NCBI RefSeq assembly: GCF_031769215.1
Contig: NW_026783060.1
Location: forward strand, 1 to 64,000
Length of the DNA: 64,000 nt
Reading direction: 5' to 3'
Source: Ylistrum balloti
Lineage: Eukaryota
Under the pieces are notes generated by a model, which was not told the origin of the DNA, made no database searches, and worked only from the letters and a program-made list of their open reading frames with translations. The first letter of the stretch is position 1. Every line of letters begins with the position of its first letter. Of this stretch, positions 1-10,161 are shown piece after piece. A program made the position numbers and the translations under genes.

Positions 1-395
1 TCCCACATTGAACATTGATTACCGTATTTTTCGTGAATAACTAAGTATTCTTTACCGACGGTAGCTGTTGGCGGAAATTTTAGCACAACGTTTCCGCTGG
101 TGGTATCTGCTAGAATAATATGATACGTATCATCCAGATTATACAAACCTGCTGTAACGAGGGTGGTTACGGGTGTAGGGTTAACAATTTGACCATCGAC
201 ATAATTCTTAGTAGAGACGTCTTGCGCGTTCACGGGATCCGACACGTTCGTTAACGTATTTCCCGCCATATCGATGGAACCAGTTACGGTAGCCCCATTC
301 TTTCGTAGAAAATTCTTATTGACGTACGACAGAGACACACCGGGTTCTGGTGGTGGGATGTTGTACGTCATATATCCAAATTTGTGAATAGGCAT
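1..395 (-). CDS. Putative fibre/spike protein 1 (runs off the window edge; absent from the ORF track because no stop is reached)
   Basis: Manual translation from ATG 395: MPIHKFGYMTYNIPPPEPGVSLSYVNKNFLRKNGATVTGSIDMAGNTLTNVSDPVNAQDVSTKNYVDGQIVNPTPVTTLVTAGLYNLDDTYHIILADTTSGNVVLKFPPTATVGKEYLVIHEKYGNQCSMW... The DMAGNTLTNVSDP..DVSTKNYVD segment resembles tail-fibre/adhesin stalk repeats. Function is inferred. Confidence 0.65.
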   Translation of the reverse strand, partial: MPIHKFGYMTYNIPPPEPGVSLSYVNKNFLRKNGATVTGSIDMAGNTLTNVSDPVNAQDVSTKNYVDGQIVNPTPVTTLVTAGLYNLDDTYHIILADTTSGNVVLKFPPTATVGKEYLVIHEKYGNQCSMW

Positions 396-428
396 TCATT
401 TATCCATGTAATTTTTATAAATTAATTT

Positions 429-749
429 TTAGAATGAAATATATATATTTTTGTTGTTGTTATATACAAAGTTGAGCACATCACCTACATTTAAACTGAT
501 TCCTCTCACATCCGAAACGTGATTAAATTCTCCTTGTGGCTTTAAAATTTTACATTGAGTTTTACTACCATTAACCACGAGGACTACACCAGCCTCTTCG
601 GGAGTGGATTCTGGTGTTGTAACCGACATACCTATTTTCAAAACTTTAGTTGGTGCTAGCACGGTATAGCCAGCGTTTTTACCTGTTGCACCATCGTACT
701 TCCCTTTCACCAGTCCACCTTTTTCTTCAGCCCAGATAGTTATATATTT
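429..749 (-). CDS. Beta-rich domain (TIWAEEKGG...), in frame with ORF 750..950 behind a single TAA; possible fibre head
   Basis: Codons continue KYITIWAEEKGGLVKGKY... directly after the TAA at 750-752 in the same frame. There is no ATG of its own (the track starts it at a GTG). Confidence 0.5.
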   Translation of the reverse strand, partial: KYITIWAEEKGGLVKGKYDGATGKNAGYTVLAPTKVLKIGMSVTTPESTPEEAGVVLVVNGSKTQCKILKPQGEFNHVSDVRGISLNVGDVLNFVYNNNKNIYISF

Positions 750-950
750 TTATTCATTTTTCTTTGTAATTTTTGTGTATTCATTAATAGCTGAGAATAC
801 TTGTACTCTTAGATCCTGGATATCCATCTCTAATTTAGTCACATCAGCTTTTCTTTGGAAATTCTTATTGACGTACGACAGAGACACACCGGGTTCTGGT
901 GTTGGGATGTTGTACTCTGACGTCATATATCCAAATTTGTGAATAGGCAT
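750..950 (-). CDS. Putative fibre/spike protein 2 N-terminal part (shared MPIHKFG tail plus short coiled coil)
   Basis: The first ~30 codons are a near-identical DNA copy of the start of ORF <1..395. The C-terminal half DVTKLEMDIQDLRVQV has a heptad-like pattern. Confidence 0.6.
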   Translation of the reverse strand: MPIHKFGYMTSEYNIPTPEPGVSLSYVNKNFQRKADVTKLEMDIQDLRVQVFSAINEYTKITKKNE

Positions 951-981
951 GTTTTTTTAATATATATATATTTTTTATAAA

Positions 982-1391
982 TCAATACAATCCGTTTATG
1001 ATCTCTTGAAGCTCTCTCCCCGCGCTCATCTCTTTTAGAACGTATAAACACAAATGACCGCAAAATACCTGATCGGCTGGCTGAACCTGCTCTGTATTGT
1101 ACAAGATCCCTCGCTATAGGATATCAACTCATTCGGAGGTTGTATGCCATAGCTATCGAAATAGTATTTATTTTTTCCTTGTTTGTACCAGGCGGTCCAG
1201 TGCGTTCCTCCTCCGTCACTAGAATCTAAATTCAGAATCCCACATTCATTTCTCTTTGGTCTCTTCGGAAGTGTATCGCGCAGAAATACTCCTCTAAAGT
1301 TTGGTATTTTCAATTCATCTGCAGCCCTCATTAACTCGATATTACTTAGCGGTTTATTTGGCAGAACGACTTTTCCCACTGAAATGTTCAT
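982..1391 (-). pseudogene. PRO: Adenain-like cysteine protease, frameshifted near 1110
   Basis: Catalytic His (GTHWTAW) and Asp (YFDSYG) are in ORF 1035..1391. The catalytic Cys region ILYNTEQVQPADQVFCGHLCLYVLKEMSAGRELQEIINGLY* lies in the adjacent frame, ending TGA 982-984. Confidence 0.9.
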
Positions 1392-1406
1392 TTTTATATA
1401 TATCTA

Positions 1407-8024: not shown

Positions 8025-8030
8025 TATTTT

Positions 8031-9053
8031 TTATAGTCTAGATATTATTTTTTTATATGCATTGACGTCCAGCACCTTTTGTCTTTTTAGTTCATCGCAA
8101 ATCGATACAAGCTCGTTCCGAACGCCTGTGTTACCCGCTGCCTTGCTTGCCATCAGCAGGTCTAGTCTTTCGAGCAATGCATTAGGATCGCTAGGAATGA
8201 CAACAGATGTGCCGCTCCCTTCGTAATAATCCCTATTAGTCCAAATGGTTCTAAGCACATTCTTCCATTTCAACCCCTTGCTGGCCTTTGGTCTGTTACT
8301 CTCTGGATCGTTGCCTTTTTTGAGAGCGTTCGATTCAATCATCATCTTCGCGTAATTTTCGTAGTCCTGGTCGGTGTATATTTGATCGTCTGGATTCTTG
8401 GTTACGATGAGTTCCCACAATCCCGGTGTTCCTTGGTACTCTTCACCATCCACTACTATGTTATCATCTACAAAGGCGACGGGCTTATTGCCTATATAAA
8501 AATTGCCGTTCTTATCGTATAGCCCGTACGTTCTATCAGCCTCGGATTTGGAAGCGAACTTCCTTAAATATTCTTGCGCGATTGGTCCGATAAACTGCGT
8601 ATCAGTATCTTCCTTTTCTTGTTGTTGAAACCCCTCTATAGATGGAAACGCTGGAAATGTGATTTTCTTCAATTCCGATATGTTTTCTTTGATGGGTCTA
8701 ATATCAGACCTTATGTCTTCTGCCGTACTTTTTTGTACGTCCGTTATAGGCTTGAATATTTTACCGAGATCTGTTTGTAACTCTCGTTCACCAGTCCGTC
8801 TCTCTATCTCTCTGTTTTGGAGCCTCTTTTTCAGCTCGAGAAACTCTTTTACGATTAAATCCCTTTTCTCGGGATCTGTAATCTTTAGAAATGACTTTTT
8901 TTTTGTTTCTAAAGATAATATATCTTTTTTCATCTCGATTTTCATCTCACTTTCCATCTCACTTTTCATTTCGATTTTCATCTCGATTTTCATCTCACTT
9001 TTCATCTCACTTTTTATCTCGATTTTCATCTCGATTTTCATCTCGATTTTCAT
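8031..9053 (-). CDS. Conserved Polinton protein of unknown function with an N-terminal MK[IS]E repeat extension
   Basis: Open ORF. SFLKITDPEKRDLIVKEFL coiled region, YQGTPGLWELI core and C-terminal PSDPNALLERLDLLMASKAAGNTGVRNE are recurrent in Polinton proteins (recognised from family knowledge, not searched). Confidence 0.75.
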   Translation of the reverse strand: MKIEMKIEMKIEIKSEMKSEMKIEMKIEMKSEMESEMKIEMKKDILSLETKKKSFLKITDPEKRDLIVKEFLELKKRLQNREIERRTGERELQTDLGKIFKPITDVQKSTAEDIRSDIRPIKENISELKKITFPAFPSIEGFQQQEKEDTDTQFIGPIAQEYLRKFASKSEADRTYGLYDKNGNFYIGNKPVAFVDDNIVVDGEEYQGTPGLWELIVTKNPDDQIYTDQDYENYAKMMIESNALKKGNDPESNRPKASKGLKWKNVLRTIWTNRDYYEGSGTSVVIPSDPNALLERLDLLMASKAAGNTGVRNELVSICDELKRQKVLDVNAYKKIISRL

Positions 9054-9062
9054 CTCACTTTT
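8928..9062. repeat. 12-bp tandem repeat TTTCATCTC(GAT/ACT), ~11 units, coding MKIE/MKSE
   Basis: Directly visible; in frame with ORF 8031..9068. Confidence 0.95.
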
Positions 9063-9678
9063 TCTCAAACAACTTGCGGAAGGACTCGCGGGTTTCCTGC
9101 CTTCCCTGTTCGATCAGGGATTGCTGTAGGTCGTAGTCCATGTGCTTCTTGGAAACCTTTCTTACTTCTTCCTTCATCTCGCGGTACTTGACCAACTCTG
9201 CTAGTATGAGTTGAAATTCCTCATCACTTACTGCATTATCGGCTAGCGCCTTCGAGATGTACGACGATATCGTGTTCAGTTTTGCTTGTGCCAAAACCTT
9301 GATCTTTTCGTGCTTTTCGGCTTTGGCCGCACACTTCCTATTCACATATTTTCCGACGATACTCAGAGCTCCGGTAGCAAGCGCAACGCCCTCCATCACG
9401 ACAACAATCGGTGCTGCTACTACCGTAGATAAAAGGCTAACACCACCGATGCCAAGCCCCATGGTGACGCCGATAAGACCAACATCGACATCATCCACTA
9501 TCTTCACGGCTCTGTGGTACTTCTTGCTGAGGGTCTCACGCTTTTCTCTCTCTTCCTCGAGAATCCTCTGAATCTCGTTAATTTTCTGTAAACGATAACC
9601 TTGTCCCTCATCTTCAGGGGGAGCTGTTGGCAACTTTGGATAAAGCGCCGTATCATTATTCACTTTGTTGATTTCCAT
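9055..9678 (-). CDS. GasderminX-like putative membrane-active protein (adintovirus family)
   Basis: LYPKLP...YRLQKINEIQRILEEE..KKY start, Gly-rich hydrophobic hairpin (GLIGVTMGLGIGGVSLLSTVVAAPIVVVMEGVALATGALSIV), and KHEKIKVLAQAKLNTISSYISKAL.D..VSDEEF.LI C-terminus match the family called GasderminX in adintoviruses. Confidence 0.65.
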   Translation of the reverse strand: MEINKVNNDTALYPKLPTAPPEDEGQGYRLQKINEIQRILEEEREKRETLSKKYHRAVKIVDDVDVGLIGVTMGLGIGGVSLLSTVVAAPIVVVMEGVALATGALSIVGKYVNRKCAAKAEKHEKIKVLAQAKLNTISSYISKALADNAVSDEEFQLILAELVKYREMKEEVRKVSKKHMDYDLQQSLIEQGRQETRESFRKLFEKK

Positions 9679-9702
9679 ATTTTTATATGTGTGAGATTTT
9701 TT

Positions 9703-10089
9703 TTATGTCATATAATGTATGAGACATAGAGGCTCGTTTTCCTCAATGACAACAACCCCGTTCGAATTGTTCGCGATGTTTATCACCACATCATCAACAC
9801 TTTCGAGAATGGCTTCATTTTGTATACTGCATTGCCTCATTTTAAGGCTTTGCTTTAGTGTCGTTAAAACCATACCACTAGTCATCCTCAATCCAAACCT
9901 TAATCTAATCGTTTTATTTTCTTTTGGTCCGATGGTAAGTTTATTTTGATTGAAAATTTCCCACGTTACTGGTTGCACCTTCTGTGGAGGATGTTTTACA
10001 TCCATTACCGGTATCAAGTAAATCGTCTTCGGCTGTCTTGGCAAGTTATACCAATTTTTCGGTTTTACACCAAATTTGTGAACAGGCAT
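9703..10089 (-). CDS. dUTPase-fold pseudoenzyme carrying the MPVHKFG N-terminal module (128 aa; real start ATG 10089)
   Basis: TIGPKENKTIRLRFGLRMTSG...KQSL...VVINIANNS...IEENEPLCLI follows dUTPase strand spacing, but the catalytic motifs (RS, GxIDxDYxG, Q, RGxxGFGS) are absent. The track's extra 24 codons translate the (AT)n upstream region. Confidence 0.55.
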   Translation of the reverse strand: MPVHKFGVKPKNWYNLPRQPKTIYLIPVMDVKHPPQKVQPVTWEIFNQNKLTIGPKENKTIRLRFGLRMTSGMVLTTLKQSLKMRQCSIQNEAILESVDDVVINIANNSNGVVVIEENEPLCLIHYMT

Positions 10090-10161
10090 TCTTTTTTTAA
10101 TATATATATATATATTTAATATATATATATATATGTTCATGACCACGTATGCATGAAACAC

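What the first reader, a model, noticed from the sequence alone, without database searches (positions are those of the whole stretch)
1..10110. Modular fibre/spike cassette: one N-terminal docking module fused to three unrelated bodies
Seen: three ORFs begin MP[IV]HKFG-x(3-6)-YN[IL]P (ATG 395, 950, 10089). The first two share ~90 bp near-identically. The third shares 19 of the first 21 nt and also the upstream ATATATATATTAAAAAAA(C/GA)ATG context of the 950 gene. After the module the bodies differ completely: a tail-fibre/adhesin-like repeat plus head, a coiled coil (plus a beta-rich domain), and a dUTPase-like fold. Known: adenovirus fibres dock on penton through a short conserved N-terminal tail, and fibre stalks and dUTPases are trimers. 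Inference: the promoter+tail unit is a reusable penton-docking (or sorting) cassette onto which different trimeric heads are swapped, giving one Polinton virion several alternative spikes and possibly different tropisms.
Basis: partly seen in the sequence, partly recalled or inferred. Interest (0 to 1): 0.82.

Follow-up and report, generated by a model that had tools for sequence, protein, structure and literature searches.

The report
Shared start peptide on Polinton fibres
Three genes of a decaying virus-like Polinton element in an animal genome begin with the same seven amino acids; relatives keep this tag in front of many different fibre heads, so it probably fastens these proteins to the capsid.

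Summary
Three minus-strand genes (ATG at 395, 950, 10089) start MP[IV]HKFG: 3 DNA matches against 0.03 expected. It is not a local duplication, because relatives of all three gene types keep the M-x-x-x-KFG start. About 36 of the best 150 cluster representatives are fibre-type proteins starting this way; K5 and F6 are invariant, and their last 110 residues fall into at least 14 unrelated groups. ORF1 carries a phage-type fibre repeat. ORF2 is a coiled coil plus a jelly-roll head, probably C1q/TNF-like, and is broken here by one in-frame stop. ORF3 has a dUTPase fold but no dUTPase sequence signature. Three corrections apply. The YN[IL]P half of the motif is not conserved. The TATA plus A-run context occurs at most gene starts of the element, and ORF1 and ORF2 do not share it. 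ORF1 and ORF2 share about 100 nt that begin exactly at the ATG (93/100 identical), which looks like gene conversion between fibre paralogues. The most likely function is a short capsid-anchor peptide; penton is the partner suggested by analogy, but this is untested. Fibre-like genes in Polinton-like viruses were already known; the shared tag on three different folds was not found described. New variant of a known kind.

The parts
1..395 (-). ORF1: first 131 codons of a fibre-type gene, cut by the window start. It has the KFG start peptide, a Pro-rich linker, one phage-type fibre repeat (aa ~35-70), then the start of a beta domain.
300..395 (-). N-terminal module of ORF1 (aa 1-32), near-identical in DNA to 849..950.
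   Evidence: (D18, D20)
429..950 (-). ORF2: broken fibre-type gene with N-module, coiled coil and jelly-roll head. It has one in-frame stop, and its C-terminal end is about 10 residues shorter than in relatives.
849..950 (-). N-terminal module of ORF2 (aa 1-34).
951..981 (-). TATA-like run plus A-run directly upstream of the ORF2 ATG. This promoter-like context is element-wide.
9703..10089 (-). ORF3: 128-aa protein with the KFG start peptide, a variable linker and a dUTPase-fold beta core (aa ~25-128).
10069..10089 (-). The 7 codons MPVHKFG of ORF3; 19/21 nt identical to 375..395 and 930..950.
10090..10135 (-). TA-rich run plus A-run upstream of ORF3, like that of ORF2.
5666..6961 (-). Double jelly-roll major capsid protein; a possible docking partner.
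   Evidence: PF21738, E 1.2e-58
10772..11542 (-). Its size and position fit, but no tool confirmed it.
982..1391 (-). Adenain-like protease gene, broken by one frameshift. It lies directly upstream of ORF2.
   Evidence: (PF00770, E 0.08)
1407..5189 (-). 1260-aa ORF taken for the protein-primed PolB on size and a DTDS motif read by eye. Pfam found only an endonuclease VII-like insert.
12871..13818 (+). rve integrase; the last gene before the 40-bp satellite.

Best explanation
Window 1..~13840 is part of an endogenous, partly decayed Polinton/adintovirus-like element in an animal genome.

ORF1 and ORF2 are two tandem fibre-type genes. Each has an N-terminal module, then a shaft (a phage-type fibre repeat in ORF1, a coiled coil in ORF2), then a beta head. 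ORF3 is a small dUTPase-fold protein. All three start with the same short linear peptide, M-P-[IV]-H-K-F-G.

Shown: relatives of all three families keep this peptide, with K-F-G nearly invariant. It always sits at the extreme N-terminus, is followed by a variable linker, and is predicted disordered in isolation. In the fibre family it stays constant while the C-terminal heads are exchanged.

Inferred: the peptide is the virion-proximal anchor that fastens otherwise different, probably trimeric, surface proteins to one common site on the capsid, and it orders only on binding. The site is unresolved. By analogy with adenovirus fibre tails and the PRD1 spike it would be the vertex (penton); the trimeric major capsid protein is the alternative.

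Inferred: the near-identity of the ORF1 and ORF2 modules (93/100 nt, starting at the ATG) is gene conversion between paralogues that must fit the same site. The 19/21-nt identity of ORF3, with identical codons (chance 0.036), hints at a smaller DNA-level exchange.
For: - Motif: 3 hits against 0.03 expected.
- ORF3 relatives at 56-80% identity: all 5 full-length ones keep HKFG-x-KP, while the next ~15 residues vary.
- ORF2 relatives: 6 of 8 start M[SP]VDKFG, including P0192 at 40% identity.
- Fibre-type: about 36 of the top 150 representatives of 50%-identity clusters align 1-68 to 1-68 and start M[PS]V[DNS]KFG.
- Column shares at positions 1-8 are at least 0.86, and K5 and F6 are 1.00.
- Median pairwise identity is 0.61 in the first 35 aa and 0.29 in the last 110. 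In 89 of 435 pairs the N-terminus is at least 70% identical and the C-terminus below 30%.
- The last 110 aa fall into at least 14 BLAST-unlinked groups. One protein has an F5/8 type C domain and one a weak C1q match.
- Fibre repeat: PHROG tail fibre families down to E 9e-8; PDB tail spikes and fibres at E 0.007-0.1. In those phage profiles and PDB chains the repeat lies about 100-160 residues in (a few PHROG families match further in); here it follows a peptide of about 20 aa.
- ORF2-type model: helix 21-62 plus a beta sandwich. Best fold matches are trimeric C1q/TNF/BclA-type heads and phage fibre tips.
- ORF3 model: all top PDB and most BFVD matches are trimeric dUTPases, TM about 0.61-0.68 for the best 20.
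- N-termini have pLDDT below 50 in both models.
- The genes lie among capsid-module genes on the same strand.
- P0007 (ORF3 type) and P0188 (ORF2 type) list the same longest contig length, 51787, so they probably lie on one contig elsewhere.
Against: - There is no binding evidence of any kind. The tools fold single chains only.
- The penton-like ORF has no confirming match.
- dUTPase-fold proteins of viruses are usually non-structural enzymes or regulators, so ORF3 fits a 'spike' poorly.
- The ORF2-type model is weak: pLDDT 63, TM 0.34-0.47.
- The genomic context of relatives was not examined, so their link to capsid-encoding elements rests on this window and one contig-length coincidence.
- The fibre set was chosen by similarity to the query, which inflates N-terminal conservation.
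- The identical codons in ORF3 (p about 0.04) also fit a DNA-level signal.
- This copy is decayed.
Confidence: 0.55

Rival explanations
1. General virion-incorporation or sorting tag. The KFG peptide brings any cargo into or onto the particle, or to the assembly site, and not only spikes. ORF3 would then be a packaged or assembly-site dUTPase-like protein and not a surface knob.
For: ORF3 has the fold of an enzyme family that is normally non-structural. It shares only the 7-residue peptide with the fibres, not the half repeat. It lies between a membrane protein and a Gly/Ala-rich hydrophobic ORF of the virion module.
Against: In the two fibre types the tag sits where fibre anchors sit. There is no evidence of internal location. 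ORF3 lacks any dUTPase sequence signature, so an enzymatic cargo is doubtful.
Confidence: 0.2
2. DNA-level unit. What is shared is a promoter, initiator or translation-start context that reaches into the first codons and spreads by recombination. The peptide itself is a passenger.
For: ORF2 and ORF3 share the 18-nt upstream run as well as 19/21 coding nt. All four comparable codons are identical, with chance 0.036.
Against: ORF1 and ORF2 share the coding module but not the upstream DNA. The TATA/A-run context is found at most genes that lack the KFG start. In relatives, residues 2-4 vary while K-F-G is fixed, and in the fibre types conservation continues over a further ~25 residues. That is a protein-level pattern.
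Confidence: 0.1
3. A short linear motif read by a host or viral factor other than the capsid, for example a chaperone, a trafficking signal, or a processing or degradation signal.
For: It is short, N-terminal, predicted disordered and followed by Pro-rich or basic linkers.
Against: No known motif family was matched by any search. There is no signal-peptide-like hydrophobic stretch. The architecture of the fibre types points to an anchor.
Confidence: 0.1
4. A recent local duplication confined to this copy, with no function.
For: ORF1 and ORF2 share 93/100 nt.
Against: Relatives of all three types, down to 26-40% overall identity, keep the KFG start. ORF3 shares only 21 nt.
Confidence: 0.02

Closest known systems
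Adenovirus fibre (tail, shaft, knob) on the penton base, including adenoviruses with two fibre genes
   Same: A short conserved N-terminal peptide is followed by a shaft and a beta head. Two fibre genes sit in tandem with the same tail. The element belongs to the same capsid lineage: double jelly-roll MCP and an adenain-like protease.
   Different: No adenovirus fibre family was hit in Pfam. The shaft is a phage-type repeat or a coiled coil, not the adenovirus shaft repeat. The peptide is a different one. Docking on penton is untested. I did not compare letters with the adenovirus tail motif, by rule.
Phage T7-type tail fibres and tailspikes: conserved N-terminal anchor domain, exchangeable C-terminal receptor-binding parts
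   Same: The repeat after the N-module is homologous to the end of the T7 fibre N-terminal domain and to PHROG tail fibre families. The mosaic pattern is the same: constant N-terminus, variable heads.
   Different: The anchor domain of roughly 100-150 residues that precedes the repeat in the matched phage fibres is absent and replaced by a peptide of about 20 residues. The carrier is a tailless, Polinton-type element of an animal.
PRD1-type vertex complex (penton with a trimeric spike and a second receptor-binding protein)
   Same: A tailless double jelly-roll virus carries more than one kind of spike protein anchored by the N-terminus at one vertex (own knowledge).
   Different: No sequence or fold match to PRD1 proteins was returned by any search here.
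Fibre-like genes already reported in Polinton-like viruses, oomycete Polintons and MELD viruses; 'Cah' coiled-coil capsid-surface class of adintoviruses
   Same: Phage-like fibre genes with modular domains have been reported in these elements (PMC12220804, PMC10748475, PMC8502044). ORF2-type proteins fit the coiled-coil 'Cah' description (PMC11071296).
   Different: None of the passages of these papers that I searched for fibre and related terms describes a common N-terminal peptide shared by different protein folds. The string VDKFG occurs in no relevant paper of the library.
Trimeric dUTPases and dUTPase-derived viral proteins
   Same: The ORF3 core has the dUTPase fold: TM about 0.61-0.68 for the best 20 PDB matches, and the top 50 PDB matches are all dUTPases.
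   Different: There is no sequence-level match. The core of about 100 residues is short for the family. It carries the fibre-type start peptide.

Membership tests
Polinton / Maverick (adintovirus-like) element | Double jelly-roll major capsid protein | tested here: met
   PF21738, E 1.2e-58, for 5666..6961
Polinton / Maverick (adintovirus-like) element | Retrovirus-like (rve) integrase | tested here: met
   PF00665, 34.8 bits against a cut-off of 32.6, for 12871..13818
Polinton / Maverick (adintovirus-like) element | Protein-primed family B DNA polymerase | tested here: inconclusive
   The 1260-aa ORF has a DTDS motif by eye. There was no Pfam PolB hit and no PDB hit; only an endonuclease VII-like insert was found.
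Polinton / Maverick (adintovirus-like) element | Adenain-like cysteine protease | tested here: inconclusive
   PF00770, E 0.08, below the cut-off. A Cys-containing C-terminal piece lies in another frame. The gene is broken by one frameshift.
Polinton / Maverick (adintovirus-like) element | Single jelly-roll penton protein | tested here: inconclusive
   10772..11542 got no hit in Pfam, PHROGs or PDB sequences.
Polinton / Maverick (adintovirus-like) element | Terminal inverted repeats and target-site duplication | not testable with these tools
   The element runs off the window start.
Adenovirus fibre | Sequence match to adenovirus fibre shaft or knob families | tested here: not met
   No such Pfam family was hit for ORF1, ORF2, ORF3 or 37 relatives.
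Adenovirus fibre | N-terminal tail bound to the penton base | not testable with these tools
   Only single-chain prediction is available, and comparator letters may not be used.
Phage T7 tail fibre N-terminal domain (PF03906) | Match to the whole domain above the gathering score | tested here: not met
   ORF1 scores 14.7 bits against 25.2. Twenty-three of the 37 aligned sequences (ORF1 plus 36 relatives) match, but in the 10 proteins checked only profile positions ~99-154 of 157, i.e. the repeat.
C1q/TNF-like trimeric jelly-roll head (ORF2 type) | Fold match of the C-terminal domain | tested here: inconclusive
   Top Foldseek hits are C1q-like, TWEAK and ExsFA/BclA, E 5e-5, but TM is 0.34-0.47 and model pLDDT 63. 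BclA_C reaches E 0.019 in one member.
Trimeric dUTPase (ORF3) | dUTPase fold | tested here: met
   The top 50 PDB matches are all dUTPases, TM 0.56-0.68, E from 3e-5. BFVD gives the same. Model pLDDT 71.
Trimeric dUTPase (ORF3) | Sequence signature (Pfam dUTPase) and catalytic motifs | tested here: not met
   No Pfam dUTPase hit at E up to 10 for 9 members; one weak Herpes_ORF11 match at E 0.12. No PDB sequence or profile hit.
Trimeric dUTPase (ORF3) | Homotrimer | not testable with these tools
   Single-chain prediction only.

The most novel reading that the evidence does not exclude
In one lineage of animal Polintons, a seven-residue N-terminal peptide (M-P-x-x-K-F-G) is a universal plug. 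Through it any trimeric beta protein is mounted on one capsid site: phage-type fibres with exchangeable lectin-, C1q- or discoidin-like heads, coiled-coil spikes, and even a domesticated dUTPase-fold knob. These elements would then have made virions with several interchangeable receptor-binding proteins.
Probability: 0.3. Interest if true: 0.75.

Novelty: new variant of a known kind. Interest (0 to 1): 0.6.

Why it matters
Whether animal Polintons/Mavericks form infectious particles, and how such particles would recognise cells, is still open. This work finds a conserved anchor peptide on a large family of fibre-like proteins with exchangeable heads, encoded here inside the capsid module. That gives a concrete sequence marker for finding candidate attachment proteins of these elements in genomes. 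It also gives a specific peptide-capsid interface to examine by structure prediction and comparative sequence analysis. Finally, it shows a dUTPase-fold protein carrying a fibre-type start peptide, which is unusual for that fold.

Tried and rejected
- Local duplication only: rejected, because relatives keep the motif.
- 'Promoter plus tail' as one mobile cassette: rejected as a general statement. The context is element-wide and ORF1/ORF2 differ upstream. A small DNA-level exchange between ORF2 and ORF3 remains possible.
- YN[IL]P as part of the motif: rejected.
- Whole T7 fibre N-terminal domain in these proteins: rejected, since only the repeat matches.
- ORF3 as a recognisable dUTPase by sequence: nothing found.
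- Confirming the penton-like ORF and the PolB by Pfam, PHROGs or PDB sequence: nothing useful.
- Names or organisms for relatives: none on record.
- Rfam on the window: no hit.
- Literature search for the peptide string: no relevant paper.
- Adenain cleavage site in the module: considered from memory only and not tested. The module has no Gly-Gly pair.

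
Full report
**Observation**
- On the minus strand, ORFs starting at 395, 950 and 10089 translate to MPIHKFG..., MPIHKFG... and MPVHKFG....
- The 20-nt pattern covering these codons occurs three times in the 64 kb window and nowhere else. The expectation is 0.03, and 0 of 100 shuffles reached 3.
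- A six-frame protein search found no further copy that starts a real ORF.
- ORF1 and ORF2 share 93 identical bases over 100 nt plus one 6-nt indel. ORF3 shares 19 of its first 21 nt.

**Setting**
- Window 1..~13840 is part of a Polinton/adintovirus-like element that runs off the window start.
- Confirmed genes: a double jelly-roll capsid protein (PF21738, E 1e-58) and an rve integrase.
- Less certain genes:
  - a weak adenain-like protease;
  - a 1260-aa ORF that I take for the polymerase on a motif read by eye only;
  - a 256-aa ORF in the place of a penton that no tool confirmed.
- A 40-bp satellite follows the integrase.
- Further along the window there is a secretin-family 7TM receptor ORF, so the host is an animal.
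- This copy is decayed:
  - ORF2 has one in-frame stop, and its C-terminal end is shorter than in relatives;
  - the protease has one frameshift;
  - the ATPase-like region 11569..12413 is in at least four ORF pieces.

**The three bodies**
- ORF1 (131 codons, cut by the window edge)
  - After the start peptide and a Pro-rich linker it carries one copy of a fibre repeat.
  - The repeat matches phage tail fibre families (PHROGs down to E 9e-8) and solved tail spikes and fibres (E 0.007-0.1).
  - It also matches the last ~30 positions of the Pfam T7 fibre N-terminal domain, below threshold for ORF1 itself.
- ORF2
  - It is one gene. Intact relatives of about 185 aa (P0186, a cluster of 84 members) have the N-module, a coiled coil and a beta domain in one frame.
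  - A model of P0186 gives a helix at 21-62 and a beta sandwich at 67-184 (pLDDT 63).
  - Its best fold matches are trimeric C1q/TNF/BclA-type heads and phage fibre tips, but TM is only 0.34-0.47. I call this head probable, not shown.
- ORF3
  - The model (pLDDT 71) matches trimeric dUTPases throughout the top of both structure libraries; TM is about 0.61-0.68 for the best 20 PDB matches.
  - No sequence search finds a dUTPase.
  - It has the dUTPase fold, but I do not count it as a member of the enzyme family.

**Is the motif more than a local duplication? Yes.**
- ORF3 relatives (56-80% identical): all five full-length ones keep HKFG-x-KP, while the following linker varies.
- ORF2 relatives: six of eight start M[SP]VDKFG, including one at 40% identity.
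- An exhaustive search with ORF1 gave 2498 hits.
  - Many are very long multi-repeat proteins that share only the fibre repeat.
  - About 36 of the best 150 cluster representatives (123-697 aa) align from residue 1 and start M[PS]V[DNS]KFG.
- In the alignment of these, K5 and F6 are invariant, positions 1-8 have shares of at least 0.86, and positions 9-18 have shares of 0.35-0.73.
- The heads vary.
  - The last 110 residues of 30 representatives fall into at least 14 BLAST-unlinked groups.
  - Median pairwise identity is 0.61 in the first 35 residues against 0.29 in the last 110.
  - One protein ends in an F5/8 type C domain and one in a weak C1q match.
- The relatives come from ENA assemblies with contigs up to 3.4 Mb and carry no names.
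- One ORF3-type and one ORF2-type relative list the same longest contig length, 51787, so they probably lie on one contig.

**What the shared unit is**
- The only element common to all three types is the seven-residue start.
- ORF1 and ORF2 types share more: KFG, a linker, and a stretch that is the end of one fibre repeat and the start of the next. The same stretch recurs between repeats in relatives such as P0111. They look like paralogous fibre genes.
- In this element their modules are nearly identical in DNA, and the identity begins exactly at the ATG; the upstream DNA differs. In the relatives found, the two types have clearly different module sequences. I read this as gene conversion within the element.
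- ORF2 and ORF3 do share 18 nt of that context, and ORF3 uses the same codons as ORF1/ORF2 for P, H, K and F (chance 0.036). That is a weak hint of DNA-level exchange.
- YN[IL]P is not conserved.

**Mechanism**
- Shown: the conservation, the position, the mosaic pattern and the folds.
- Inferred: the peptide is a capsid anchor. The reasons are:
  - in the fibre types it sits at the N-terminal end, which in adenovirus, PRD1 and T7-type fibres (own knowledge) is the virion-proximal end;
  - in the matched phage profiles and solved fibres the same repeat lies about 100-160 residues in (a few PHROG families match further in), behind an N-terminal part, whereas here a peptide of about 20 residues stands in that place;
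  - it is predicted disordered on its own;
  - it is kept constant while the heads change.
- The partner is unknown. Penton is suggested only by analogy, and the trimeric capsid protein is an equally simple site for a trimer.
- ORF3 fits a 'spike' least well, so a more general incorporation tag is the main rival.

**Literature**
- Phage-like fibre genes with modular domains are known in Polinton-like viruses of protists (PMC12220804), oomycete Polintons (PMC10748475) and MELD viruses (PMC8502044).
- Coiled-coil 'Cah' surface proteins are described for adintoviruses (PMC11071296).
- I found no description of a start peptide shared by different folds.

**Left out by rule**
- I fetched no comparator from any animal virus.
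The two pieces of ORF2 were searched and aligned apart.

- Neither was put into a tool, a note or this report, nor used as evidence.
- Early in my reasoning, before I knew that the stop inside ORF2 was a break, I located it. Its place is not given in the notes or here.

Noticed in passing
window 12385..12789 (+): ORF of 134 aa with a DUF5679 zinc-ribbon-like domain (E 1.5e-14) and a phospholipase A2-like domain of the parvovirus VP1 type (PF08398, E 2.3e-9). It is a candidate membrane-active virion protein of the element.
   Followed up: partly
window 13986..15645: 40-bp satellite of 41.5 copies at 90% match, directly after the integrase gene. It may mark or replace the end of the element.
   Followed up: no
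window 1407..5189 (-): The 1260-aa polymerase-like ORF has no Pfam PolB hit. It carries an endonuclease VII-like zinc-finger insert at aa 555-594 (E 1e-5; PHROG endonuclease VII, E 8e-8).
   Followed up: partly
window 982..1391 (-) and 11569..12413 (-): Broken genes of this copy. The adenain-like protease has one frameshift. The ATPase-like region is in at least four short ORFs in different frames, with a Walker-A-like stretch read by eye just upstream of one piece.
   Followed up: partly
window 8927..9063 (-), inside ORF 8031..9068: A 12-nt tandem repeat (about 11 copies) encodes a KIEM/KSEM run at the N-terminus of a 345-aa ORF of unknown function in the virion module.
   Followed up: no
window 7692..7734 and 7863..7905: Exact 43-nt direct repeat within the small-ORF region between the capsid gene and the 345-aa ORF.
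   Followed up: no
window 10162..10746 (-): 194-aa ORF with a long Gly/Ala/Leu-rich hydrophobic stretch, between ORF3 and the penton-like ORF. It fits the 'membrane-active capsid core protein' class described for adintoviruses (PMC11071296), but no family hit was found.
   Followed up: no
window 52397..55192 (+): Host gene pieces: an ORF with a weak somatomedin-B-like match, followed by a secretin-family 7TM receptor ORF (PF00002, E 1.2e-9). They indicate an animal host.
   Followed up: partly
window 58326..59537 and 60093..62272: Two large satellites: 130 bp x 9.3 copies at 99% match, and 39 bp x 56 copies. The second creates long artefactual ORFs (61177..62282).
   Followed up: no
proteins P0010-P0037 and others: The fibre repeat of ORF1 occurs up to 38 times in very long proteins (up to 5398 aa) of unknown origin. 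These lack the KFG start, and some begin with signal-peptide-like sequences.
   Followed up: no
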